This document shows, one piece after another, positions 15,801-63,338 of a stretch of DNA of 64,000 nucleotides (the stretch's first letter is position 1; each line of letters opens with the position of its first letter). Position numbers and translations under genes: made by a program. Origin of the DNA: Phallusia mammillata (Eukaryota); the NCBI GenBank assembly GCA_965637545.1, contig OZ281500.1, forward strand, positions 22,320,001 to 22,384,000, read 5' to 3'. The notes under the pieces were generated by a model. It searched no databases and was not told the origin of the DNA. It saw only the letters and a program-made list of their open reading frames with translations.

Positions 15801-18800
15801 ACTGATTTTGTTTCTTAAAAATATGTTTCAAAATCAAGTTAATATATAAAAAATGAATAATAATAATTTTTTTTAAGTCTTCAGTTAACCAGATTTAGTC
15901 ATTCAAGATGTGCAGTGTATAGTTTACCAAATTTATACGCGTCTATAATATCTGATTTAAAATCTATTGTGTTAGGTAAACAGAGTTGATAAGTTGATTC
16001 TGAACTGTATATTGAACTGCTAGTTTCATTTTAAGCATTTTTTGAAATAATGGTTTGACAATTTCTTAGTTTTTATTAGTATTGCAAATTTTCAGCCTTC
16101 AAATTCGTATAAGTTGACACTGCAGCTTGTGGTCTTTCATGTACTGCACATTTCAAATAGATTTCATGGACATTTTTAGGTTGAAAAAGCCACAGAATCA
16201 GACGATTCTCATACGACAGCTGATACTTACGACAGCATAAGTTCTTCGTCCAGCATCATTAGTGAAGAAGACGCAACTGCTTCCCTCTTCAGCGAAATCA
16301 AACCACCAAATTCTGAACTAAAACGTCGCCAGTGCATGGACAACGCAAACAATAACGTATCCACAGAAGGCTGCACCCAAGGTTTTTCAACAGAGGTGGA
16401 TTTTTCTGGAAGGGAAGTTTTGTTTTTGGCTCTTTCGTTCGTCTTAGCCACTGCGTCTCTACTGTCGAAGGAACCTGGTTATTGCGCTTTACCAGTATGT
16501 GTCGTATACGATTTATGGATTCGTCATCGGTTGGGCATCTTTGGAGCTTTGAAGGCGATATTAAGCAAGGTTGGTGAAATAATATTATGTGTGTTTGTGC
16601 AATTACATTAGAGAAATAATAATATACCACGGGGAAATTTAACTTTAACATGCAAGTTTCATAAATGAAACCTGTCTACAAACTTGGTTAGTGAAAATAT
16701 GTCCCTTGTCTGTCAGACCTAGAAGCCGCTTAACAATGATTCAAGTCCAGTTAAACAAAAATTTGGGTTGAGCAACAATAGCAATATTTCGAAATTTGGA
16801 TGAACATATGTATATATATATATTTATTACTGGGATCAGTCCTGAAGCGTTCATGCAGACCAGCGATCACGACACACTCATATATAAATCATAGTACACC
16901 AGGTCTATTGAAGGCGTTATACCGAACGCCAAAATGAACACTTTAAGCATTTTGAAACGTCAGGTTATGACTTCATGTCGCAAAACAAATAACAGAAGTA
17001 GTTTCTCCATGTGAGCAACGGAAGAACATTGCTACTATAACCTAAACTATGCCATTGGTTCCTCCCGAACAATCTATTGTAATTGAATTTCGTAAAGCCC
17101 AGTGCGCCGAACAGTTGTGCGTGGGTTACGGGCGCCACCACTTAATATATTTTCACAGCGGGAGAGAAATTTATAATCACCGTGTCTGGTGGTCGTTACT
17201 TCTACTGACAATAGAACGAGGTTACGGGGTTTGCAGAACTTATAAGTCAATTTAGTTTTGTGGTCACATATGTTGCAAGGGCAATTTTTTGAAAAGCGCA
17301 ACTTACTAGCCCAAAAAAACGCCGCTACAAACTGTATCAAAAACAAGCCAAATTTTACTGTAAACTTATAAACTGCAACAATAAATTAATTGACAACCCG
17401 CCCAACTAGATGTCAGAAACCAGCCTAATGGGGCGAGAAAACCGCAACCCTGACAATCGCGGCCGCCCTTTAACAAAGTTGTAAAACTTTGATTCAACTT
17501 AAAAACCTTTAGCTTGTTTTTTTTTCGAACGGAGGCTCCCTGGGAATTATGTTAGCATTTAATCTCAAAACGTATACGTCCCGGTAACATGGTTGTCGAC
17601 CCCTGGTCTAGATGTCTTAAAAACAAAAAAACGGTGCATTCAATGGCTTTGGGCGCAGGACAGTGCCTAACGTTAAATTTCTTACATTTGAGTGGATGTT
17701 TGCATCATATTTTTACAAACGGGAGCATCTTTTCGAGTGTTTACTGACCTTTGACTGTGACGGAACGGTTCTCCACGCAGCGGGTGTCAAATGTAACGCT
17801 TGTTAATTTATTTAATCTCACGTGGCGCTTATCAAGTGTGATAATGTAAACATTCTACCACAATGACAGCTGCTATATATATATATATAGTTCCCTATAG
17901 GGAACTGTTTTTTTATTGTTGACCTTTATGGCCATAAAAGTTCTATTTTAAGCTCCCTTGTTTCACCACAAAGCCTTAAATGTGGAAGTATGTTTGATAA
18001 TTTTCATCAAAAGCTAAAAGAATTGTCAGCTAGAAAATTTCTTGCATTAACATAGCATGAGTTACTACAATTTTGTCGCGACGCTTATACGGTTTATTTT
18101 CAAGTATAGGCTTTAAAACAAAACACATACAGATATAGAAGCATACGTTATAGCATTAATTTAAGGTAATTGTAAGTGCCGGGCTTTCTTTTTTTGCTAT
18201 ATCCCCAATTTTTTTCTTTATAAATACTATTTAGGCAGAGAGTGAAAAATGAACTGAGGGGTGGTTTACAGAGAAATATAGCGGGCGATTTTTTCCGTGA
18301 CCTTCAATTACCGGGCCAGTTTGACCTTGAAATCAGCGCATCGACCTCTAGGGTACCATGAAGTTTACATTCAAAACTTTTTCCGCAGGCGAAACTGTCA
18401 CAAAAAGCGTTGACTGGCCCGCTGTTGGTTAACATATGAACCATAAAATAATGGCTAGTGTTATTTAATAACATCTGAAGATAATTTCTTCAATGTTGTA
18501 TTGCCTGCTTACATAAACGGCGCCAGTTCAATTCAACGGTTTTTAAACTGCTATGAAATTTAAAAAAATATGAATCTACTAATTATTGGGTGAATTTACA
18601 GTTAAATTTTTATCGTTGTGTCATAATTGTGGATATTTAGACCTAAGTGACCCCATATGCCTTTGTTTCATTTTGTCTGTTTTCACAAATTCCTTTTACG
18701 TTTTAGATTGTAATGTTTTAGTTTAAAGGAAAACAGTCTCAAATATCGCGTTAGTCATACAGTAAGCGCCTATATACCTACGTTAACCCTTATTTCCTAT

Positions 18801-27800: not shown

Positions 27801-30800
27801 TAGATGCCTTTCAGCTTCCCGCCGTCTCTGTCTTCTCCTACTGTCGGTGGACGTGCTACTATGCAGGGAGGAGTTAAGAAACGATTTTCGACGCCAGTTA
27901 GTGTATATCGACTTATGTCGGTTTAGTTTAGTCTTCTTAACAGGGATTCCAATATCATTGTTGGTTCGCGACGGGTTTCTTTGATAATTGGTTCGCGTCG
28001 TTGTGTACTCGTAACCCGCACATGACAAAGAGTCCTGTCGGGAAGCGACACCGTCGTCGACACCGCCGATAGAGTAGCGATACAAGCGACTGCCGACCGA
28101 TCCCACCGACACCCGGCGATCTTCGCAATCACTAGTGGGTCCTGGGATGTCAACTGAAAGTGAAGAATTTTGATTCTTTAAAGATGAGGACTCTGCATCC
28201 AGCTCCGAGGTAGGATGCTTCACACTAGCGATGCTGAAGCTCCTATCTACACAATCTCGGATGTCATCCTGCTGTGCCCCGTTAAAGACGCTTTCTCGCT
28301 CCTCATCTTTAGCCGCATCCTGGTCGCTTCTTTCCTCTTTTGCGTCCGGAACCGAATTGCTCCTGTAGTTTTTCAGGATCTTCCGCATGAAATTCTGACA
28401 CCACCTGCACTCCTCTTGGGATTTCTCACGTGATTTGTACCTGTGAAAGAACATTCTAGAATGAAATCTTGAGTTTGATAACGACTATACATATGAAGCA
28501 AGGGCTCCAGCAGTTTTTATAATGGGTTGTTTCATCATATGATAGTCACATTGCTGTTATTTCATCACATGATAATTACCTCAATTTAAGCAGAAATTTT
28601 CAGCAGGTATTGGTATATCATACATTACGATGTTTTTTTTTTCTATCTGACACTATGCTACCATGAAATTACTGCTTTGTAATAATGAAACCACCATTCG
28701 ACAAAACTACATTTAAAAACATAATGGTAATATAACTCACAAAATACTTTGAGATTACAACTCTTGGCCGAAAAAGCAACCTTCAAAATGGTACTAAAGA
28801 AAAAAAGAAATTCTCTAACCTTCTCATCCTGTCACTCCTCGCAAACGCAGCCACCAAAGATGAAGTGCTTTCCTCATCCCGATCCTGGAACTTGCAGTTG
28901 TCATGGTTACAGGTGTAGCTAGTGCGTGCGTCATCTGACGTCGCATGATCGATGACGATTTTTGGAGTCGAGTTCTTGGAGCTGGTCATCACCCTTTTAG
29001 GAAACTTGTTGATCCCGACTGATCTTGCTCTTTTCCGTGATCCCCTGCTCCTCTGGCTCCCTGATCTTGAGTCGTTTCTTCTTATCGGAATGGTAAAACT
29101 CCTCTTCTTCATAAACTCTTGGACTTGCTCTTTTCCCACATCGCAATCTGGGCAATTTCCCCCCTCACAGTTTTCAACGGGTTTTTGAGCGTTTTCTCGG
29201 CTCCTGATGATACCCTCCTTGACTCCACCTATGCTCATGATTCTCTTTAGAGGTCTTAGCTGCCTCCTAGAGGATTCTTCATCCTTGAGATTAAGATTGT
29301 CCTCCAGGATAACAGTAGGAGATAAGTGTGATGAACTTTGAATTGACCCCTCTTCTATATTTTTCTCACATCCAAGTAGATTCGGCCGTTGGTGGTTCAC
29401 ACCATCCTCTGTGCCTAGTGACTGTGGTTCCCTGTCACCTGAAGTAAGAAGACTTGAACTTTTCATTGCGATCTTCTCATTGGCTGAGCTTAAAGGCGCC
29501 TCAACTACTGTGGCTCCCTCCTCTGTTCCAAAGTTGTCGTTGTGATCAACTGACATTGCTTTAGATGTTGGTTCCGAGTCGATTGTTGAGAGAATTGTAA
29601 CGTCTTGCATCCTTACCGTGGAGTTCAAAGTGTGCTCCGAACGCATTCGAAAGATTCCGTTCTTTAAGGAGGTGGTGTCGCTATTGTCTGGAATATTTAG
29701 AACTAATTAATAGATTCCACACAATCCAAAGTATAAATGTGACTTATAATGAGTGAAAAATCTGATGTATGTTTTTGAGACCCATTATGTTTAGGCCTAG
29801 CAATACCCATCAATTTGACGTTAACAACAACTTTATTCAAGTGTAGCTTAGTTGGTAGTGCGCGAGTCCCGGAACTCTCGTGTCGTGGGTTCGAATCCCT
29901 CCGCAGGCTAGATTTTTTAGCCTAAGCCTTGCCATTTGGGAATGCTTTGTGACCAGATGATTCGGTATAACGCCTTTAATTATGATTTAAATATAAGTGC
30001 GCTGTGATCGCTGGTCTGTATGAACGCTTCAGGGCTGATCCCAGTTATGAATTTATGTTCATATTTGCTGCATGAATCCTTGAGAATTTATACCAAGCGC
30101 AGAATTCAAGTAAATTTTACAGGAAACTGATAATCCAGTGTTTCAATGGTTATTAGTTTGTATCACTTACCTCCCCAACTTTTCCTTCTTGAAACATCTT
30201 GCTTGGTTCGACTCCCTCGGTTAAATGAATCTCGTTTTCCGCCTGAGATGAAAAGGTCTGGAGATGACATGGCTGTCAGATGTTTTCCATTTCGCTTTTC
30301 TGCGGAAACACACAAACATATTGTGAGAAGATGAAAGTACTGAGTTTTGTTGTGCAACGTTAAAACAAAATATGTTTTAAGTTGAGATTATAAATTCAAC
30401 TGAAAATTGTAACTGAAGTTGGCAAAAAAAAAGAAGTAATGATAAATGTCAACGTGTTTTTTTACTGTTATTTAAACATAAAAAGTTTTACTGCTACTGA
30501 AGCGTATAGCACCTCGAACAATGGAGAATAAAGCAAAAATGTATTGTAAATTTGGAAACAACTAAAAATTGTAAGGCCAAAAGTGTAACAAACGAAACAA
30601 TACCAAAAATTTGAGTAATTTTTATCAAAAGTGTGCCTGACCAAACACATCAGTATCACGTAGTCGGAAAATACTCACGTGCTTCTTTGGGTTCGGATTT
30701 TTTGTTTCCTCCCTTCGTCGGCGTTGCCATGGGAACCTGTAGATATGACATCGACCTTTTCTCTGGCGTGTTATTCGCGGTTTGTCCGCTCGCCGACTCA

Positions 30801-33800: not shown

Positions 33801-36800
33801 ATTGTGTGCCATAGTTAACAGGAATGCCCAATTTAAGATAAGCTTTTGACTAAGTTTCTTATTTAATTTTTTTTATTTTGCAAGCGGTTAAAACTTAACG
33901 CTGTTTTTTTGGAACTCACACAAGCTCCCTGTCAAATAAGAGCACCTTTCACTAACTGTTTTATATTGTCGAAACTTTTTTACCGTTAGATAATTTAATC
34001 ATAAAAGCATTTGTTATCAAACCAAATGCACAAGCCTAAAACTGAAACAAAAAATTGAAATTAGGCCCGAAAGTTGGTGAAGTTCTGGCACAAATGAAAT
34101 CGAATGTGAAGGTTCATATCAAACTTGTTTTATTCCAACTTAAGCACAAATTTGACTTGAAAAACTTGACTTACAGACTGCTTTAAACCTATATTTTTGT
34201 ATTTGAATAATTAGATGAATTCTGTCAAACCCGTTAATCTTTGTCGAAACCAAGATTAAAAATCATTGCGTTGCATTGATTCGTTTCGATTTTGTCATGA
34301 GCATTGGTAACGAGTATTGGGAAAAAATTGATAAGGGCTCTACTTACATATTAGGAAAGGCATGTAGAGAATTGGTGCTGAAATCCACACTGCCACTAAC
34401 CACCATTTTATTCGGTCCTTGGAAAAGATCTTGCGATATCTAAAAGACAAAAACTACTCCTTCAAAAAATACTCAAATTTTTGCCATACTTTAGTACACA
34501 CATAATGTGACCGACTGATTCGGTATGATGCCTTTATTAGATCTGGCGTATTATGATTTACATACGTTGAAAAACTCGGCGCATTTTGCGGTAGTCAGGT
34601 AAAATACCAAGGATAAATAACTTGTAATTTTTAGGTTTGAACTTTAAATATATTTTCGCAGATATACAATTTTATCATACTTTTGTGCACACGTTCACCT
34701 AAACACGCTTTAATATCTTGATGAATGGTATTCCAGGTACACAGTTTTAACCCTTTCACTTAAAGCCATTACTAGGGTGAATTATAGTTTTAATTCATTG
34801 ATCTATCGAACAAGCAGCGTTAAATACAAAGCGTGCAAGCCTTTTGTACACTTGTGAGATTTTAATAGCTAGTTATCGACTATATGTGACAGCTTAATCA
34901 AGCTCCATCATTTCTGTTCCCACAGATAGTTAGTTGACCTCCATTAATATTTCATGTACTGCGGACCAACCACTGAGGTTATGTAAGCCCCTGTACCAGG
35001 ACTTTGCTTTTAAGTGCAAATGTTTCATGTGTATAACTGCTACAGTGTATAGGAATGCATAAATTAAATAAAATGTGCTGAAAAAGTACCATCCAAAAAT
35101 CATCTTTTTTGATTTTTTTGTCTTACGGGAATTTTTTTGGTCACGAAATAGTTTTTTAAACTTTTTCAAATTGACTCATTTTATGGATATAAAAGTTGTT
35201 CACTAACAATTTTTTACCCCAAAATATTAGATTCCAGTTTTATGTAGCAAATTACAGTAATTAAAATGGACAGATATTTTTTACGTTCTTAAGGCGCTAA
35301 TACAAAGGAGTCAGAACTCTACAATGTTTCTCATGTATCGGTATTTGATACTGATTGCTTGAGATTCGAATCTATACGTTTTAAGCTTGGCATTGTACCC
35401 AGAGCGCCAAAGTCCTGCGGTTTGTTCCGCTATCTTGTACGATCTTAGCAAAGCTTTACTTTCACTTAGGTCTTCCTAATCTTACAAAACTATACCACCA
35501 GCTTATGTATAACTTCTATGTGTAAGAATTAGGTCAAAATATACAAGTAGACAATGCACGGTATGCTAATGAATTATTTCTGACCATAGAAGAGCTTATC
35601 TATGGGCCATTGTCTGAGATTAATTATGCCATAATGAATATGTCAAAAAATCGAAAGCATGATTCATAAATGCCAATGGCACTCTATGCTTGAAAAATTG
35701 CGTTTTCGTGTTATACTGATAACGTATGGGAAACTGGAAAAATTCCAGATGACGTCATTGTGATGACGTAGGAAACTTGATAAGAAAAGACTAGTTTGTA
35801 TTTTTGATAAAATGTTTGGAATCCAATTCCTCTATAACTATGCTATAGCAGTGCGAGTTGTATTAAACTTCAGCGTACTAAATCTATGCACAATTAGTTA
35901 CATTATTGTGTTTAATATGTTTATTAATACGACGTTTAATTTTTCTTGTTGGACAAAGAGTTAAAAACGTTGATACGTTTGAAATGGCTTGGCGCATTTT
36001 TTGACGTTTATTTTTGTTAAAGTAGTGCTTATTTCGAAATTGTAAGGTCTTGGTAGTAAATGTGGTTGTAATTTTGCCTTTTTCTTTATCTTACAAGCTA
36101 AAACTATCGATTCTTAATGCATCCATAAAATCACCCATCAGCTAGTGAAAAAATAAATACACCCATGTTGTCAGTTTGATTGTGATTGAACTGGAAAGCT
36201 AGAAAACGTTAAAAGCCCAAACTGCCGAGAATAGACTCAAAAGGCCAGCATCTATTCATAGGCCAACCCATGTCCCCTTTAAAACCACTAAAAGTGACTT
36301 GAATACAGCCACAAAGGTGATAGCGTGTCTTCGGCTATTTTTGCGCGATCGGTTTTACGTGGAAGAGTTCGCTATAAGCTGAAGATTGTCGTCCACCGAA
36401 ATTAACATGTGACTTCTTGCATAACCTTGCCACGCTTTACGGTCCAGCCGAACTGGCGATTAATAATTCATTGCGTGAATTTCCATTACGAATCGTAATA
36501 AATGCGTTGTAACTTTTTGTACTGCGCACGTCTTTTTGTTCGACAATGGCATCGAGTGAAGGGACGGTGACATAAAATAATTCCTTTTTTTCTTTACGTT
36601 AAGATTTGATTTATAAGATTCTGAGTATATTTCGCTTTTTTGGCGATTAACAACTATTTTTAAATGTACCCACAGCAATTTTATGTACATTGTCACCAAT
36701 TCAAATGTATAAAAAACCTCTATATTTTGAGCTGGATCTAGACTACGTTTTATCACATGTGTTTACCAAAGATTTAGTGTCTTAGATTTGGTTTGGGAAA

Positions 36801-39800
36801 AATTCAAAAAATAGTTTAGGCTTCCCAGTCTAAAAAAAGACAAATTGTTGCTGTCTGCGAAAACCCAAAGCACACAAAGGAATTTAACAACACCTATTTG
36901 CTGCCTAAAGTTATGAAATCTTCATAGTTTTACCACGTATAGTCGTATAGCCTATATATGACCACGATACTTTTACAAAGGCATTTTCTAGTGTTTAACT
37001 GACGTTAGGTTTTCATGCAAACATTTTTTCATGATGATTTTTGCCGGAACAATCTCGCTGAATACGATTTTTTGAACTTAACTTTTTGACTCCTCCAAGC
37101 TACTTACTTTGAAGAATGGACGATTCCAACGTATCGGTTGAACGCTATGAAAACCAAATTGATAACAGACGAAGATAATGTCCAGTAATACACAAATCCC
37201 AAAGCCGTACAAAGTTGACGTGGATAGAAATCGTCTCCTGTTGCTACGAGTGGTAAAATCATTGGCATCACCTGTGAAGGTACGCACAAATGTAATGTAC
37301 ATTCAACTTAAATTACCTAAAACCAGAAAGGTCAGTTTAAGACATTGAAAAGCGTCGTGGGTTCGAATCCCACCGTGTACCAAATCTTCTTGAAGATTGA
37401 AGTCATTGAAAACACAGTTTTGATGTGTGAACCCTTATGTACATTTTTACCAATTTTAAAAGTCTATTTTTTTAAGTCTCTAGCAATCACAAACCCCCCT
37501 TGGACCATTTTAGAGGCTTCTTGGGGTCTACGAACCCAGTTTGTGAACCCCTGTTTTAAATAAGACAACAATAATGCTATATGGTGTGTGGACCCTTACG
37601 GGCAGTTAACTGCATTTTTGAAAACTATGAAGTCATTAATTTTTTTTACAATAATGACCCCCTGTGACCGCATCAGGGGCATCTTGGGGATCCACGAATC
37701 CCAGTTTGGAAACCACTGCTTCGACAAAAAACATTTCTTCTCACCAATACTGAAAACACGAGATCCACGATGCACAGATTAGTGATTAGATGATTAAATG
37801 ATGTCTGAAGTTTTCGGTTGCGTCTGTAAGCTTCGATAGTGACACTGTTTCCAAAAATCCCAAGAACGGAGACGACCACGCCCACTGCCACGCCAGTTAA
37901 CGCCATCCAATCAGCAGGTGTTGTGTCTGTTACGTATTTAAATGCAAACATATGTCAAGTGGAAGTTTTGTTGATAAAATTGTGGGTCACTTGATTAAAG
38001 GAAAACTGTTGCTATTATTTTTGCTTGGCACATTTATTTCTCTTATTAAGTCTTCAGAAAGTTTTACGAAAAATATATATTGTCATAGCTAATCGCACAA
38101 TTCGTTATTGGACGCGCTTTAGACGTGTATTATTTCATTGTAGTGAACGAACCACCATGTAACATGCAGCATGGCTGATCTAATAATGGTTTTGTCTAGA
38201 CTTGCGATTGCTTTCAAAGTTTGCACTCTTTATAGGAAATCTTTATCTGTGGTAACAATTAGAGCGCAAATCTAAATAACCGACATTCAATTCAGACACC
38301 ACTTAAGAGTTCGCCATATTTTTCCTTTTCAAGCCCACTTGTAATGACAAAACCCCCTTGTTTTGTCACAATGCTTTATGACGTAGATACTACGTAACAG
38401 TAAGGCGTTGAAGAGCTTGATAGATTGTGTTGAAGTGCATTGCAAACTTCAGTAAGCGTCCTTGTCGTGTACGAAGTCACACTTTGAGAGCTTGTAAGCA
38501 CGTGTCGTATGCTGGCCCGGTTAAGATTTATGCCCCGATGACATCTTGGCGTTTAAACATGGGTTTTTAGGTTTTTTAACGTGACATTTGCGTTCAAACG
38601 TCGCGTTGGTTGTGCAAAACCTTCCTAATGCGCCGGTTCTACGAAACCTTGAAGGTGATATATTTGTTTTGTTTGATATGACTTTCAATTTTGCGAAGAT
38701 AAATCTGAGTTTTTTAATAAAATTTGAATTTTTTTCTTAGAATTAACGCGTCAATGCCATTTGATTTTGGGGCTAAACGCTTTGCAAACAATAAGTCAAA
38801 AGAAGCCAAACCAAATCACGAATTAGAAGGGTTTTTAACACATCAAACACTTTTTTTGCCAATTAGTCTCTTGACTGCATTGGAAAGTTAGACTCCTAAC
38901 TGTAAAATTAAACGTCTAATTCTTTCGACTTTTTCGGTGGTTTAACCCTGAAGCAGTAAGTTACGTTTCTGCAAACAAACCTCTTCGGTTTCATGTTTAA
39001 CAAGGTGAAAGTTGAATCACTAAACACGGGTGATATCAGCTCGTTGAACCCAACCCAACTCGTGTTTGCTTTCCATTCCCAGTTCAATAATCGCGCGCGT
39101 CCTGCTGTAACGTGGTGCCGGTTGTTTGCAGGTGTTGTATGTTTGTGATATTAACACAATTTATCACGTCAAGGTTTTGTTTCCTTGAGCAAGCGACCGA
39201 GACGCACTGGGTAAAATCGTATTTACAACTCACACAATAGTTGTACTTTCCGGTAGGGTTCAGGCTTCTGTTTTTATAACGCAGGTTTGGGCCTAACTTC
39301 ACATTTTGATTACTGTTACACAATTTTACCAACTTTTCGGTCTAATTCGGAAAAATCAGGTTTTGTACCGGGTTTTGGGGAGTTGTACTTTAGGTTTTAT
39401 ACCCGCTTGCTACCCTGTTTTTACACAATATCTTATCCAAAACAAAAATTTTAATTTATGTCTCCATTGGCAACTGACAGTCTGCAGGTGCACGATTTGA
39501 GCGGATGTTTTGATTTTTGCATCATCTTCTGCACTTGACGGGTTGTCAACTACAACGTGGTGTTATGTCTTTATATTACTTTTCCATTGTTTAAATACAG
39601 TACTGTTTAAGCTGGATGATAGCACCAACCCCGAATTTGTGCCGTTAGTTTGGCGACCAGCACTTCAGTCAAACAATATACATCAGGTTACGTTTAATGC
39701 TAAAAACCTTTCGATTTAAAATGAATGTGAGAAACCCTGGTCTAAGATTTATCACCCTTGTCACAAACAGCGCACCACGATTTCAACAAGTAGTCTTAAA

Positions 39801-57500: not shown

Positions 57501-60500
57501 TAATATATTTACAACTTGAAGTTTTTCTTAGTGATATATTTCTTGTCAATTTCGCAACGTTTTGTTGAAAGAGTAATTTGAGATTGAAAATCTCCCCATT
57601 CGGTCAAAACAAGTTTGCATTGTTTCTGTATCTAATAGTTTTAAACTGAAAGGATTATAAGAAAAAATAACATTGCTTCTCATAAGCGGCTTAAATAATT
57701 CGTGTTCAAACACGGTTAACAAAGATATTGCTGATTTAAGTTGCTCAACCATTAATCCTCTGCTATCCAAACTTTTTCATCTTACGCAAATCATCACACT
57801 CTCAGCCACGTACAATAATATTATTCTAGTCCTATTTGACGAAGACATCCCAGACATTTATCCTTTATTCTTTGCCACAACAAAGCACGTCCCAATGTCA
57901 ACAGTATTAAAGCCTGTCTGTAGGCTTAAAAGGTCCAAAAAGTCCCATCAATGCCCCCCATTTAAAATATCGGTTGTCTTCGTACAAGATAAAATGACAG
58001 ACCTCTTAGAATGAGGAGGTAAAATACCTGTTCTTTTCGAAAAAAGTGACACGCCGGTTCTATTCCAATAAGGGAAAATGGCGATTTTTTTTCAAAGACC
58101 TTTGAATGCCAATTCTGTTTAAATGGGGCAAAATTCCGGTTTTCTTTGAAAAAGTTAAAATGCCGGTTCTGTTCGAATAAGTTAAAATACTGGTTCTATT
58201 CGAATCAGTTAAAATACTGGTTCTATTCGAATTAGTTCAAATACTGGTTCTATTCGAATTAGTTCAAATGCTGGTTCTATTCGAATTAGTTCAAATGCTG
58301 ATTCTATTCGAATAAGGTAAAATCCTGGTTCTATTCGAATAGGTTTACACATAAAATCTTTTCGCGAGCTTCTGCAAGAAACGATTTAATCTGGTATTAT
58401 GGTTTATCTGAACTAGGCGCTCCAATGAGGTATGATTGTACAAATTGCAACTCACGCAAAAGAACAAGAACCGCCATTCAGTAATGCAGTAATGTATATT
58501 TTGTGTTATTTTTCGTTTCAGGATGGCCTTCTTACATTTTGGTCGCCGAATCTCAAACTGAACCGTAGCAAGTCGATCTTAGAAAGTTTACCTGCAGAAC
58601 GACCAGCTTTTGTCAACAAACCATCAGTGGTGGGTTGCGTTAAAGTGTGAATCAAATTTTTTTTTATGTTTCGAAACTTTTTAAAGCATGACTTCGAATA
58701 ATGTTTGTGCATATTCAAGAAAAACTAAACTTTTTTTACAAAATTGTTGCTGCACTTGTAACTAAACTATAGGTTAGGCTGATCCCAGTTATGAATTTAT
58801 GTTCATCTTAACTGATACTGGTCAATCTGGCGATCCCCTACTACGAAGCTGACATGTGCCGCATACGAGGCAGGCAACGGTGCTTGTGATTCGACTTTCG
58901 GCGGATTCTCCACTGAGCCTGTGTTGCTCAGTTGGTAGAGCGCGAGTCCCGGAAAGACTCCTGTCGTGGGTTCGAATCCCACCGCAGGCTAGATTTTTCT
59001 AGCCTACGCCTTGCCATATGGTGGTGAATGCTTGGTGACCGGCTGATTCGGTATAGCGCCTTCAATGAACATGGCGTACTGTGATTTATATATGAGTTTG
59101 CCGTGACCGCTGGTCTGCATAGATGCTTCAGGGCTGATCCCAGTTATGAATTTATGTTCAACTTAACTAAACTATAGGTTATTCTACGCATTTGTTAACA
59201 GAAATGAAAGTGTTACCATGCAGTACATTTGCAACTACTGCTTGTGTTAAGGCACGACTGAACATTTACTGGAGTTGTAAATCGGGCCGGGGTTTACGGG
59301 TCAGACTAGCGCTTGAATTTGAATAAAACGGGCTTGGTTCTGACTTTGTCAAACACTCTGTCAACTTTTGTATTGTAATTTCACGTTGGTTAATCTGACG
59401 ATATGGTCTATAAGATTGAGTTCAGGCCTGGTTTGTGACTTGTACTTTCGGGTTCTGGCTACTGCAATAAAGTTCAACATATTTGAATACCGACTGCTTA
59501 ACTCGCACAATACATTAAATTTCTCAATACCTTTTCAGTGGGTTACCGACGCTGCCATGGTTACCGCGCACGGCAAACTGCTAGTGGGCACTGGAGAGCG
59601 CGAAATTCACTTCTATGACGTCATGACGTTCGAATTTTATTGTCAAATTATCGGGTTGGACGCGGTGCCTCTCAGGATCGACTTGTGCCAAATGGAGAAT
59701 GACGAATGTCTCATCGCATATGGAGATGACCAGGTGGGAAGGAGGTTTTGAATTGTATTCGTTCACATACGCTGTTGCACGAGGAAGTTAGAAAGACTGG
59801 GCATGTGGTACGCCAGGCCTATAGAAACCATGTGCAACGGATCTTCTGAGGTAAACTTTACCACGCGACAACGCCTGGGCTAAAAAGACTAGAAGCCTGC
59901 GATTGGATTCAAATCCGCGACTGGAACTTATCTGGGCCGATTTTTATTACATATAATATTAGCTATCGTTTAAAGATGAATAGATTTCGACCTTAACAGT
60001 ATAACTGAGCAATATTTGTAGGCGAAATTTCGTTTAATTCACATAATATAGAAAAAATAGGAAAAAAAAGAAAAATCATTCTATGGTTTTCTATGAAAAG
60101 GCCACTGTCTTTATTCTTTTGAAACTTTCTTAGACCCTGACAATTAATTTAAAAACGTAATGTAACTATTTTTCAACAATGAAACGAAAAAAGTGTTTTT
60201 GCGTAAAAGTCAAACGATGTACTTTTATTGCAAAAAGTTTTATATTGTGCATTTCTTAAAAATGCAAATGAAAAATTGTTCAGGGTTGCATCAGCATTCT
60301 TATGTTCACATCGATTGGTGATACCCTGCGCACCTGGAAGAAAGTTGCCAAAGTGAACGGGATTCCAACCGTGACGATGCATGACGTAGCAAACGGAAGT
60401 GGGACGTCATTTGTTAAATGGAAAGTTCACGAAGATTGGGTGACAGAGGTAGAAGAAATTTTGTGTTTTGTAGCTGTATATAAAGCTTTTGTTATTTAAT

Positions 60501-63338
60501 TGGCTTTTTTTGTAATTGAGCAACCTATACTATAGCTGCATAACTTTTATGAATACACCAAAACCCAACACATTTTCGTACGTCTGGTCCGCGAGAGACG
60601 CTATTCTGTGCCAAGTTAGTCCCCTAGGCATGCCCATGTTGTATAATGCGTTACCATGACAAAACTAGACTGTGGTGGGATTCGAACCCACGACAGGAGC
60701 CTATACAATTGCATTTCTCCCCTTCTCAAATGTGTTACAATTTAGAAAACAACTCAAGTTTACAAGTCTGTTTGTTAAACCAAGGTTAAGAATCACCAAA
60801 CTATATACGGCGTTAAATCTTCGGACGAGAAAGACATTACGTTGTTCGTTTAACATGGAAATAAACACGAAATTATTACACTCAAAATATGTTTTTACAG
60901 TTACGATATTATCACGAACTTCGCTCAGTGATTTCAGCATCCAACCATGCAGCAACTGCTCTTGTTCGAGGTAAGTACGTCACTTAATATTTTCATGTTG
61001 CTGCGCTTGCGCATGTAATGTGTTGGTTTATCTAGCATCGACAAGTTGCATTCAACAAGTTAATTTAAATAAAGTATATCTTGTTAAAAGATTAAACAGT
61101 CTTTTTTAGTACATTGCTCTATCTATAGTTTACCACGTCACTTAAAATGTCTTTCGGTTTGATTTAAAATTTTGTTCCCCACAAATTGTATTCAAATGAA
61201 AGGTTACTCTTCCACGTCTAACATACGACTTCTTCGTAGGTTGTACTTTAGCCAGCACAGCCCTGGACCGACCACGCCAGGGACCACTTGCTCCCAGCCA
61301 CTCGGTGACGCCCTCCCAGACCGGCCCTAAACCGACCCGACGTAATCACAGCATGGCGCCTCAGAGGCGCCAAAAGACCGACCAATCAGTTTTCTATGTT
61401 TACAAGGGAGTGAAGACCTTCGACTTTTGCAAGGAAAGCAACATAATGGCGTCGGGAGGTGAGACCATGTCACAGTTGTAACTTGTGACGTCAAAATGCG
61501 TAAGTTATGACGTCATAATGTTTCATCAACGTCATAAACAACGCATAGGAGAAGTGTAACGGCATTATTTTTCTTTTTGCGTATACACAATGACTCCATG
61601 AAAAAAAGAAAAATGCAGAAACGTGATTTTTATTTGAGTCGAAAATTTCGAATAAATAAGCAGACAATAATCCGTACTAAGTCATGTGTTTTTACTTTTG
61701 CTTTAAGAATTACGATTTTTGTAAAAATTAAAGAAAAACTATTTGTTTTGAAGGCATGGACCGAATTGTTCGATTGTGGAACCCGTACGTTCCGCAGAAA
61801 CCCACAGGTTTATTACGTGGTCACAATTCGCCTATTGTGTTTATCTCGATAGCTGGCGAAGATGGGAGGATTTTCAGTGTTTCTGCCGATAAATGCGTCA
61901 AGGTGAGAATTTTATTACTTAACAACTGTCTTGTAAAATTAAGTTTGCATTCTAAAAAAAAACACGAAACGGTTTAAAGTAGAATTGTCATATTGATTTT
62001 AAACGATTGCATGCAAAAAAAATTCCAACACTTGATTAGTTTGCAACATAATACTGTCACAGAAATAATCTATAGTTTAGATCACGCTATTTTTCAGGTC
62101 AAGCGTTTCTTGGGGTTTAAGAAACGAACTCTTTAAAGCAGTGTACTTGGTATTGTTGAATTTCCCGTTACTTAGCAAAAATCAAAAAGCGTACGCGTGT
62201 TTTAATTTAACAAGTTAAATTTTTAGGTAGATTTAAACCGCATATTAAACGTGTTAAGCTTTTTACGTGTATACCCTTTCAGGTCAAGCGTTTCTTGGAT
62301 TTTAAGAAACGAACTCTTTAAGCAGTGTACTTGGTATTGTTGAAAAAAGCGTACACGTATTTTAATTTAACAAGTTATATTTTTAGGTAGATTTAAACCG
62401 CATATTAAACGTGTTAAGCTTTTTACGTGTATACCCTTTCAGGTCAAGCGTTTCTTGGATTTTAAGAAACGAACTCTTTAAGCAGTGTACTTGGTATTGT
62501 TGAAAAAAGCGTACACGTATTTTAATTTAACAAGTTATATTTTTAGGTAGATTTAAACCGCATATTAAACGTGTTAAGCTTTTTACGTGTATACCCTTTC
62601 AGGTCAAGCGTTTCTTGGATTTTAAGAAACGAACTCTTTAAGCAGTGTACTTGGTATTGTTGAAAAAAAGCGTACACGTGTTTTAATTTAACAAGTTAAA
62701 TTTTTAGGTAGATTTATACCGCATATTAAACGTGTTAAGCTTTTTACGTGTATACCCTTTCAGGTCAAGCGTTTCTTGGATTTTAAGAAACGAACTCTTT
62801 AAGCAGTGTACTTGGTATTGTTGAAAAAAGCGTACACGTGTTTTAATTTAACAAGTTAAATTTTTAGGTAGATTTATACCGCATATTAAACGTGTTAAGC
62901 TTTTTACGTGTATACCCTGTCAGGTCAAGCGTTACTTGGATTTTAAGAAACGAACTCTTTAAGCAGTGTACTATGTATTGTTGAAAAAAAGCGTACACGT
63001 ATTTTAATTTAACAAGTTAAATTTTTAGGTAGATTTATACCGCATATCCAACGTGTTAAGCTTTTTACGCGTATAACCAAAGTTTAAAAAGTTTTCAAGG
63101 GATTCACAGCCCTCTTGCAATTAAATGGAATGTGTGATTAGTCGATATGCAATTACACAGAATCGTATATATTTCATTTTTTTCAGGTTTGGGATTTGAT
63201 GGAGCAAAATTGTTTGGTGACTGTAAACCCGAAACTTCACAAGATACGCGGAGAAATTCTCACATGCGCTTATGCCCACCACTGTAGAACTATCGCCATA
63301 TCCACAGACCAACTTGCATTGCTCCGAATAACGCAGAA
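54506..63338 (+). CDS. EF-hand + WD40-repeat protein of the WDR49/WDR64/WDY (cilia/flagella-associated) family, 5' portion; continues past the window
   Basis: Exons: 54506-54719, 54973-55070, 55292-55345, 55664-55747 (EF loop DTDGSGTLDIDEF), 55812-55877 (DSSSDGEIDW), 56163-56336, 58522-58629, 59539-59733, 60284-60448, 60901-60970, 61240-61458, 61754-61902 (GMDRIVRLWNPY...GHNSPI), 63187-63338. All are GT-AG and in frame. The paralogue cannot be assigned without a search. Confidence 0.87.
57600..57990 (-). mobile_element. Possible highly decayed non-LTR reverse-transcriptase fragment
   Basis: Frame-shifted translation gives FLDL...(A/G)FNTVD followed by LLWQRI..., resembling the LINE RT motif FxDLxKAFDxVxH. 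Many stops. Confidence 0.3.
58028..58342. repeat. 27-bp minisatellite: 7 well-conserved units plus ~4 diverged upstream units
   Basis: GGTTCTATTCGAAT(T/A)AGTT(C/A)AAAT(A/G)CT units start at 58165, 58192, 58219, 58246, 58273, 58300 and 58327. Confidence 0.92.
58776..59163 (+). mobile_element. Longer-than-unit copy of a 355-bp tRNA-containing repeat, flanked by a 17-bp TSD
   Basis: TSD TAACTAAACTATAGGTT (58759-58775, 59164-59180); terminal direct repeat 58777-58813 / 59132-59168; tRNA-like cloverleaf at 58917-58990. Confidence 0.88.
59875..59925 (-). repeat. Degenerate fragment of the tRNA-containing repeat; other B-box remnants lie near 37355 (+), 48385 (-) and 60672 (-)
   Basis: GGCTAAAAAGACTAGAAGCCTGCG.T.GGATTC.AA.CC.CGAC aligns to the reverse complement of 58964-59003. 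Confidence 0.5.
62092..63077. repeat. Intronic tandem repeat, 160-bp unit x6 (first unit 185 bp)
   Basis: Units start at 62092, 62277, 62437, 62597, 62758 and 62918 and are nearly identical. Confidence 0.96.

What the first reader, a model, noticed from the sequence alone, without database searches (positions are those of the whole stretch)
58759..59180. Terminally redundant, longer-than-monomer tRNA-like insertion with a 17-bp TSD
Seen: a perfect 17-bp TSD flanks 388 bp made of one 355-bp unit plus a repeat of its own tail. The 37-bp direct repeats at 58777 and 59132 differ by one base. The order is tail, ~110-bp spacer, tRNA cloverleaf, body, tail. The 3' end CTTAACT shares TAACT microhomology with the target. 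The other copies (29842-30062, 16801-16926) end at the same ...TATGTTCA tail but lack the upstream spacer. Known: long TSDs with 3' microhomology are typical of target-primed reverse transcription, and longer-than-unit copies are characteristic of retrozymes and Penelope-type pLTRs. Inference: the template was a circular RNA or a read-through transcript of a head-to-tail array of tRNA-like genes. I found no hammerhead or HDV core, so this could be a distinct class of mobile tandem or circular RNA.
Basis: partly seen in the sequence, partly recalled or inferred. Interest (0 to 1): 0.7.

Follow-up and report, generated by a model that had tools for sequence, protein, structure and literature searches.

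The report
Penelope-style retroposon carrying tRNA-like gene
This is one young copy of an abundant 355-base non-coding jumping element of an animal genome (a sea squirt, by earlier scan notes) that carries a tRNA-like gene, was pasted in as slightly more than one unit, and bears the insertion scars typical of Penelope-like retrotransposons; it is a ribozyme-free variant of a known kind, and a circular RNA template is possible but unproven.

Summary
An 18-bp perfect target-site duplication (58759-58776 and 59164-59181) encloses one 355-bp unit plus a 37-bp repeat of its start, in the order tail, spacer, tRNA-like gene, body, tail.

- **Not a chance juxtaposition.** The genome holds thousands of copies, and the spacer always lies between tail and tRNA head.
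- **Single retro-insertions.** Of 39 independent insertions, 21 have 9-20 bp duplications around the whole structure. Insertions span 0.8 to about 3.5 units with scattered 5' ends.
- **Two start sites.** The 3' ends fall at unit positions about 35 and about 309. About 40% of insertions carry an inverted 5' arm that usually starts at one of the same two sites.
- **Best fit.** This anatomy matches Penelope-like elements. Young intact ones, each with a minimal hammerhead core, are present in the genome.
- **No ribozyme.** The unit has no hammerhead core on either strand and no Rfam ribozyme match.
- **Template.** Units within one insertion are near-clonal and no array longer than about 4 units was found. 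This suggests multimers are made anew each round, by rolling on a circle or by template jumps. No RNA data could be obtained to decide.

The scan has already read this family the same way on other DNA of this genome. Verdict: a new variant of a known kind.

The parts
58759..58776 (.). Left copy of the target-site duplication (18 nt, TAACTAAACTATAGGTTA)
   Evidence: perfect direct repeat with 59164-59181. The flank is single-copy in the genome.
58777..58813 (+). Upstream tail copy (unit positions 1-37). This is the 5' end of the insertion and the terminal redundancy.
   Evidence: 37-nt repeat, 36 of 37 identical to 59132-59168; the same segment lies inside every unit of multi-unit insertions.
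58814..58915 (+). Spacer (unit positions 38-139), an integral part of the 355-nt unit
   Evidence: 1607 candidate loci, and the 40 scored are 99-100% identical; always contiguous with the tail upstream and the tRNA-like head downstream.
58916..58991 (+). tRNA-like gene (unit positions 140-215) with a perfect B box (GGTTCGAATCC) and a near-consensus A box. It has C at position 33 and no long variable arm, so it is not a working tRNA-Ser.
   Evidence: ARAGORN Ser-GGA. (Rfam tRNA 50.8 bits); 45.8-55.3 bits in other units.
58987..59004 (+). Hairpin GGCTAGA/TCTAGCC whose loop is a run of five T (58994-58998), 3 nt after the tRNA-like 3' end. It resembles a Pol III terminator.
   Evidence: Read directly. 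Kept in 38 of 39 insertions (only one unit of L033 lacks positions 217-221).
58992..59131 (+). Body (unit positions 216-355). It contains the family's alternative 3'-end and start site A at about 59080-59089 (...GTACTGTGATTT).
   Evidence: 21 of 38 independent insertions end at unit 304-322. The outer ends of many inverted arms fall at the same place.
59132..59168 (+). Downstream tail copy (unit positions 1-37). The 3' end of this insertion lies here at site B (...TTCAACTTAACT), overlapping the target by TAACT.
   Evidence: 16 of 38 independent insertions end at unit 33-43.
59164..59181 (.). Right copy of the target-site duplication
29841..30065 (+). Old diverged relative (unit 145-355 plus 1-33) that starts inside the tRNA-like head and ends at site B
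   Evidence: 79% and 97% identity; no relative closer than 85% in the genome.
16842..16926 (-). Old 5'-truncated fragment (unit 271-355) with a decayed, TA-expanded tail
   Evidence: 86% identity.

Best explanation
The stretch is one young copy of a non-autonomous retroposon whose RNA is periodic with a 355-nt unit (tail, spacer, tRNA-like gene, body). It was inserted by target-primed reverse transcription carried out in trans, most likely by a Penelope-like element (reverse transcriptase plus GIY-YIG nuclease).

For this copy, a nicked target end finishing in TAACT annealed at the family's start site B in the tail. The enzyme copied one whole unit and ran on through the tail of the preceding repeat, stopping at unit position 1. 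A staggered second cut 13-18 bp away gave the duplication.

Shown: single-event insertion, a periodic template, two discrete start sites used on both target strands, inverted 5' arms, no ribozyme, and intact Penelope-like elements in the genome.

Inferred: the helper's identity, and that the multimer is generated anew from one monomer-level template at each round. That could happen by rolling on a circle or by jumping or realigning at the tail, rather than by reading off an old genomic array.

The tRNA-like gene is the ancestral Pol III module. Its present role (promoter with leaky termination, processing signal, or passenger) is not settled.
For: - **Copy number and arrays.** One search finds more than 4600 candidate loci, and the unit occurs as head-to-tail runs at many of them.
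- **Insertion anatomy.** Among 39 independent insertions, 21 have exact duplications of 9-20 bp that enclose the whole composite, inverted arm included. The 5' ends are scattered.
- **Two end classes.** The 3' ends fall at unit 33-43 (16 insertions) and unit 304-322 (21 insertions), each with 1-5 nt of microhomology to the target.
- **Inverted arms.** 15 insertions carry an inverted 5' arm, and in about 10 of them its outer end lies at one of the same two sites.
- **One RNA population.**: both end classes carry both alleles of the common polymorphism and show the same divergence (about 1.4%).
- **Helper present.** One search finds 434 candidate GIY-YIG sites with open frames up to 973 aa. One search shows RVT_1 plus GIY-YIG in one frame. 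One search shows copies 99.6-99.8% identical, one with an inverted 77-nt arm.
- **Published footprint (PMC8557442).** Penelope-like insertions are 5'-truncated partial tandems, often with an adjacent inverted 5'-truncated copy and a 30-40 bp tail extension at one end. Non-autonomous derivatives give multicopy head-to-tail insertions.
- **Multimers made anew.**: with a 3-unit query, only one other locus matches all three units, and the longest run is about 4 units; 26 minor variants (8 private) are present in every unit and arm of their insertion. At the common A/G site, 14 of 15 multi-copy insertions are homogeneous.
Against: - **No helper identified.** None of 30 sampled Penelope-like loci shares sequence with the unit's ends. 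The one family whose 3' end I mapped ends differently.
- **No hammerhead.** The unit lacks the hammerhead that canonical Penelope pseudo-LTRs and animal retrozymes carry.
- **Twin priming is not specific.** LINE enzymes can also produce inverted arms by twin priming.
- **Weak spots in the clonality argument.** 23 within-insertion differences involve alleles also seen in other insertions, mostly at a few AT-rich sites. The sample is 38 of several thousand copies, chosen by best score.
- **Assembly caveat.** Assemblies can collapse long arrays.
Confidence: 0.72

Rival explanations
1. Retrozyme-like life cycle. The 355-nt unit exists as a circular RNA, and the reverse transcriptase runs round it (rolling-circle copying). 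That would give insertions of any length from any of the internal start sites.
For: - Insertions reach about 3.5 units although no genomic array exceeds about 4 units.
- Units and inverted arms of one insertion share private variants.
- 5' ends are scattered, with no single pile-up that would mark a linear RNA's 5' end.
- Both start sites are used internally on both target strands.
- The tRNA-like promoter lies inside the unit. A transcript begun there from a single unit would lack the spacer, yet the spacer is transmitted faithfully.
- Animal retrozymes of this size do form circles (PMC7229834).
Against: - No self-cleaving motif was found. Rfam at E up to 10 on a 3.3-unit array, both strands, gives only tRNA. 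No CUGANGA core exists on either strand, while the same motif test finds the core in this genome's Penelope-like elements.
- No known route circularises such an RNA without a ribozyme or a splicing motif.
- The circular fold is only mildly more stable than shuffles (z = -2.1) and is not rod-like.
- Coding Penelope-like elements make partial tandems without any need for circles.
- No RNA data are available.
Confidence: 0.17
2. Read-through of genomic head-to-tail arrays. Multi-unit RNAs are transcribed from existing arrays by Pol III from the tRNA-like promoter past the T5 run, or by Pol II from outside. They are then copied with 5' truncation.
For: - Arrays of 2-4 units are common.
- Each unit has A and B boxes.
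- The inter-unit junctions seen in these insertions are seamless. Full units measure exactly 355 nt, except for two internal deletions away from the start sites.
Against: - Daughters could never be longer than their source, so arrays would erode. Yet insertions longer than one unit dominate, and no long master array was found.
- New variants would stay in one unit of the array. Instead, 26 minor variants, 8 of them private, are present in all units of their insertion, and 14 of 15 insertions are homogeneous at the common A/G site.
- A conserved T5 run 3 nt after the tRNA-like end should stop most Pol III transcripts.
Confidence: 0.2
3. An ordinary tRNA-derived SINE mobilised by a LINE, with twin priming giving the inverted arms. 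On this reading the tandem form arose once from two neighbouring copies.
For: - tRNA-like module with Pol III boxes.
- A discrete 3' tail with a small hairpin a few nt before each end site.
- Long duplications with microhomology.
- In 8 of 14 inverted insertions, the direct arm starts 0-92 nt upstream of the inverted arm's start site, as in L1 twin priming (derived).
Against: - The tRNA-like part is internal, not at the 5' end, and 5' ends do not pile up at it.
- There is no poly(A) or simple-repeat tail.
- Multi-unit insertions and a roughly 40% inversion rate at two fixed start sites are not SINE/LINE features, but they are described for Penelope-like elements.
- No LINE with this tail was found, though this was not searched exhaustively.
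Confidence: 0.12
4. Chance juxtaposition of two independent insertions, or a local DNA duplication after insertion.
For: None beyond the possibility that the family's unit originally arose this way.
Against: - One perfect 18-bp duplication encloses the whole structure.
- The same tail-spacer-head order is found at every copy examined.
Confidence: 0.01

Closest known systems
Penelope-like elements and their non-autonomous derivatives, such as MRC1 of Chlamydomonas (Craig et al. 2021, PMC8557442)
   Same: Heavy 5' truncation, partial head-to-tail tandems (pseudo-LTRs), an adjacent inverted 5'-truncated copy, and a 30-40 bp tail extension at one end. Non-autonomous forms give multicopy head-to-tail insertions. 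Here these appear, with 37 nt of redundancy in the window copy and a 33-nt inverted tail in L051.
   Different: No hammerhead in the repeat. No sequence similarity to the 3' end of any sampled autonomous element. The unit carries a complete tRNA-like Pol III gene.
Metazoan non-LTR retrozymes (Cervera and de la Pena 2020, PMC7229834; Li et al. 2026 preprint, 10.64898/2026.07.22.740005)
   Same: Non-coding units of 150-450 bp found as monomers, dimers and short multimers, dispersed, with duplications longer than 4 bp. They are proposed to depend on Penelope-like elements.
   Different: Retrozymes are defined by a type I hammerhead in every unit and by circular RNAs. This unit has no hammerhead core, its GC content is 51% rather than below 45-50%, and circles are untested.
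[quoted passage not shown] 1998, cited in PMC2770079 and PMC8490949)
   Same: A unit of about 335 bp with a tRNA-derived Pol III part, very high copy number, both dispersed and tandem (the tandem detail is from my own knowledge of the 1998 paper, which I could not open).
   Different: Sm-alpha carries an active hammerhead. Here nothing takes its place.
L1 twin priming (Ostertag and Kazazian 2001; from my own knowledge)
   Same: An inverted 5' arm and a direct 3' arm inside one duplication, with a small overlap or gap at the inversion point.
   Different: Here the second primer starts at the same two fixed sites as the first, and the direct arm is multi-unit.

Membership tests
Penelope-like-element-type insertion (non-autonomous passenger) | Target-site duplications of variable length around the whole insertion | tested here: met
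   18 bp in the window copy. 21 of 39 insertions have exact duplications of 9-20 bp.
Penelope-like-element-type insertion (non-autonomous passenger) | Frequent 5' truncation and partial head-to-tail tandems (pseudo-LTRs) | tested here: met
   direct arms of 0.8 to about 3.5 units with scattered 5' ends. The window copy is 1.1 units.
Penelope-like-element-type insertion (non-autonomous passenger) | Inverted 5'-truncated copy adjacent to the 5' end, inside the same duplication | tested here: met
   15 of 38 family insertions, for example L004, L013, L026, L028 and L055, each with a 13-15 bp duplication. The window copy itself has none.
Penelope-like-element-type insertion (non-autonomous passenger) | 30-40 bp tail extension at one end | tested here: inconclusive
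   The window copy has 37 nt of terminal redundancy, and L051 has a 33-nt inverted tail. In a periodic element this cannot be told apart from a 5' end that happens to fall at unit position 1.
Penelope-like-element-type insertion (non-autonomous passenger) | Hammerhead motif in the terminal repeat (canonical clades) | tested here: not met
   Rfam; no CUGANGA on either strand. As a control, the core is found in this genome's Penelope-like loci by the same motif test, although Rfam misses it there. Naiad/Chlamys clades also lack it.
Penelope-like-element-type insertion (non-autonomous passenger) | 3'-end similarity to an autonomous element of the same genome | tested here: not met
   no match in 30 of 434 candidate loci; the mapped 3' end of one young family is unrelated. 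The sampling is incomplete.
Penelope-like-element-type insertion (non-autonomous passenger) | Potentially active reverse transcriptase plus GIY-YIG helper in the genome | tested here: met
   open frames up to 973 aa, RVT_1 plus GIY-YIG, and copies 99.6-99.8% identical.
Metazoan non-LTR retrozyme | Type I hammerhead in each tandem unit | tested here: not met
Metazoan non-LTR retrozyme | Unit expressed as a circular RNA | not testable with these tools
Metazoan non-LTR retrozyme | Short non-coding tandem units (150-450 bp), from monomers to multimers, dispersed | tested here: met
Canonical tRNA-derived SINE (SINE2) | tRNA-derived head at the 5' end of the element, giving the transcript start | tested here: not met
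   The tRNA-like part occupies unit 140-215, with 139 nt of element upstream of it. 5' ends do not pile up at 140.
Canonical tRNA-derived SINE (SINE2) | Internal Pol III A and B boxes | tested here: met
   a perfect B box and a near-consensus A box. However, a T5 run follows 3 nt after the tRNA-like end.
Canonical tRNA-derived SINE (SINE2) | 3' tail shared with a partner LINE, or a poly(A) or simple-repeat end | tested here: inconclusive
   There is no poly(A) or simple repeat. A partner LINE was not searched for exhaustively.

The most novel reading that the evidence does not exclude
A ribozyme-free counterpart of retrozymes. On this reading the 355-nt unit circulates as a circular RNA that is cut and closed by host tRNA-processing enzymes acting on its tRNA-like module, in place of a hammerhead. 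It is then copied by rolling-circle reverse transcription from two internal start sites. That would be a new way for a mobile element to make a circular template.
Probability: 0.12. Interest if true: 0.85.

Novelty: new variant of a known kind. Interest (0 to 1): 0.5.

Why it matters
How Penelope-like elements build their tandem and inverted insertions is still an open mechanistic question (PMC8557442). This family offers thousands of young, short and easily aligned insertions to study it. It has two sharply defined start sites used on both target strands, and the units within one insertion are near-clonal.

It also shows that a passenger of this machinery can do without the hammerhead that defines animal retrozymes. 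This bears on what the ribozyme is for. If RNA work showed a circle, it would reveal a ribozyme-independent route to circular retroelement templates.

Tried and rejected
- **RNA evidence.** No test for circles, RNA ends or expression was possible, and read laying was not used.
- **More genomic copies.** All counts therefore rest on 39 independent insertions picked by best score, plus coordinate tables.
- **Helper by shared 3' end.** BLAST of the unit against 30 GIY-YIG loci gave nothing. The mapped 3' end of one young family is unrelated.
- **Known ribozymes.** Rfam at E up to 1 on the window copy and E up to 10 on a 3.3-unit array found only tRNA. Rfam also missed the minimal hammerhead cores of this genome's Penelope-like elements, so I added a direct core-motif test. 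I looked by eye for an HDV-like fold starting at either end site and found no P1 partner. That check is not rigorous.
- **Paralogous empty site.** The left flank is single-copy.
- **Separate older 'classical SINE' family without the spacer.** The 29841 copy has no close relatives, and the search could not show whether its kin have the spacer.
- **Selection on the tRNA-like part.** Template-borne variants fall in it 2 of 26 times against 26 of 115 for private ones (Fisher p = 0.11), which is inconclusive.
- **Two end classes as two subfamilies.** Rejected, because both classes share alleles and age.
- **Preferred 5' end at unit position 1.** Several apparent cases were BLAST not extending short 5' pieces. 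Real hot spots exist at positions 1, 10-11 and 300-347, all AT-rich, and probably reflect microhomology joining.
- **DNA transposon or Helitron carrying a satellite.** Rejected: no terminal inverted repeats, variable duplication length, and 5' truncation.
Full report
**Observation.** One search finds a perfect 18-nt direct repeat (TAACTAAACTATAGGTTA) at 58759-58776 and 59164-59181. It also finds a 37-nt direct repeat at 58777-58813 and 59132-59168 with one mismatch and 355-nt spacing. The first five bases of the duplication (TAACT) are also the last five of the element. The true duplication is therefore 13-18 bp and the insertion is 387-392 bp, one 355-bp unit plus its own first 32-37 bases. 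ARAGORN and Rfam (50.8 bits against a gathering score of 29) place a tRNA-like cloverleaf at 58916-58991. It has a perfect B box, but it has C at position 33 and no long variable arm, so it is not a working tRNA-Ser. Three bases after it, a hairpin carries a run of five T in its loop (58994-58998).

**The unit is real and the spacer belongs to it.** A search of the window's own genome (240 Mb) with the element gave more than 4600 candidate loci. A search with the spacer alone gave 1607, and the 40 scored were 99-100% identical. In all 60 loci fetched, the spacer is contiguous with the tail on one side and the tRNA-like head on the other. Many loci hold two to four head-to-tail units.

**Anatomy of the family.** I reduced the loci to 39 independent insertions and mapped each against the window's unit.
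- 21 insertions have exact duplications of 9-20 bp that enclose the whole structure, so each is one event.
- The 3' ends fall in two narrow classes. 16 end at unit 33-43 (...TTCATCTTAACT, site B, the window's class). 21 end at unit 304-322 (...GTACTGTGATTT, site A). Each shows 1-5 nt of microhomology to the target.
- The 5' ends are scattered, with hot spots in AT-rich stretches (positions 1, 10-11 and 300-347).
- 15 insertions carry an inverted partial copy at the 5' side, inside the same duplication. In about ten of these the outer end of the inverted arm lies at site A or B again. Both cut target strands therefore primed at the same two places.
- In 8 of 14 inverted insertions, the direct arm begins 0-92 nt upstream of the inverted arm's start, as in twin priming on one RNA.
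- Both end classes carry both alleles of the common A/G polymorphism and have the same mean divergence of about 1.4%. They are alternative start sites on one RNA population, not two subfamilies.

**Comparison with known systems.** This combination is the published footprint of Penelope-like elements: heavy 5' truncation, partial tandems, an adjacent inverted truncated copy, a 30-40 bp tail extension at one end, and variable duplications. Their non-autonomous derivatives give multicopy head-to-tail insertions (PMC8557442). Animal non-LTR retrozymes are short non-coding tandem units with a type I hammerhead, form circular RNAs, and are now argued to be passengers of these elements. Schistosome Sm-alpha combines a tRNA-derived part with a hammerhead. 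The genome here has the machinery:
- 434 candidate GIY-YIG sites with open frames up to 973 aa.
- One frame with RVT_1 plus GIY-YIG.
- Copies 99.6-99.8% identical, one with its own inverted 77-nt arm.

**Ribozyme test.** Rfam finds only tRNA in the window copy (E up to 1) and in a 3.3-unit array on both strands (E up to 10). Rfam also found nothing in three Penelope-like loci, so that negative is weak for minimal hammerheads. A direct motif test settles the point. The CUGANGA-helix-CGAAA core is present about 240 nt after the stop codon of these elements (26 matches in the 30 GIY-YIG loci). The unit has no CUGANGA on either strand. The circular fold of the unit is only mildly more stable than shuffles (z = -2.1).

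**What was the template?** Three sources of a periodic template are possible: read-through of genomic arrays, a circular RNA copied round and round, or enzyme jumps or realignment between tails.
- A 3-unit query found only one other locus matching all three units, and the longest run is about four units. So no long master array is visible, though assemblies may collapse arrays.
- Within insertions, 78 differences between units are private. In contrast, 26 minor variants, 8 of them private to their insertion, are present in every unit and arm of that insertion.
- At the common A/G site, 14 of 15 multi-copy insertions are homogeneous.
- New variants could not spread to all units by read-through and truncation alone. 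Multimers therefore seem to be made anew from a monomer-level template.
- The junctions between units are seamless.

These points disfavour read-through of old arrays but do not separate a circle from jumping. Coding Penelope-like elements make tandems too, so I rank an enzyme property above a circle.

**The tRNA-like module.** Because it lies inside the unit, a Pol III transcript started there from a single unit would lack the spacer. The conserved T5 run should also stop most such transcripts. Templates must therefore span a unit junction or come from outside promoters. Template-borne variants tend to avoid the tRNA-like part (2 of 26 against 26 of 115 private variants), but this is not significant (p = 0.11).

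**Limits.**
- The helper is inferred from anatomy only. No sampled element shares the unit's ends.
- The host being a sea squirt comes from earlier scan notes and was not checked here.
- Those notes had already read this family on other DNA of this genome as a Penelope-style retroposon with a tRNA-like gene. I reached the same reading before seeing them and tested it independently.

**Verdict.** It is a ribozyme-free, tRNA-like-bearing variant of a known kind. A circular RNA remains an open minority reading.

Noticed in passing
L030:921-1500 and L043:1640-2257 (minus strand): An unrelated non-coding repeat of about 560 bp has at least 2830 candidate loci, with full copies at 80-88% identity. 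It carries CCAAT and TGACGTCA motifs. In two independent old copies its 3' end (...CCCCTGG) is joined at the same point to unit position about 342 of a young insertion. This could be a target preference, a template jump onto that repeat's RNA, or coincidence.
   Followed up: partly
G000 contig C3, about 3.89-5.07 Mb (loci L008-L012, L015-L018, L024-L025, L027, L029): The same two-unit insertion with the same flanks recurs at least 10 times, in both orientations, at spacings of about 40-500 kb. One version has a 23-bp deletion in one unit. This looks like a large block of segmental duplications rather than separate insertions.
   Followed up: no
L069:34-2175 (also L070-L074, L080): A very young Penelope-like family: 99.6-99.8% identity, open frames up to 973 aa, and RVT_1 plus C-terminal GIY-YIG. 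It has a minimal hammerhead core (CTGATGA...CGAAA) about 240 nt after the stop codon. Rfam does not detect this core even at E up to 1.
   Followed up: partly
L033:1729-1860: One unit's body has a local expansion of an 11-nt motif (ATGCTTGGTGA) into a short tandem run. This is a minisatellite born inside the element.
   Followed up: no
window 60658-60702 (-), 37354-37375 (+), 34507-34564 (+): Short matches to parts of the unit: the T-arm plus hairpin, the T-arm alone, and the body. They are probably fragments of other tRNA-like repeats or true tRNA genes and were not examined.
   Followed up: no
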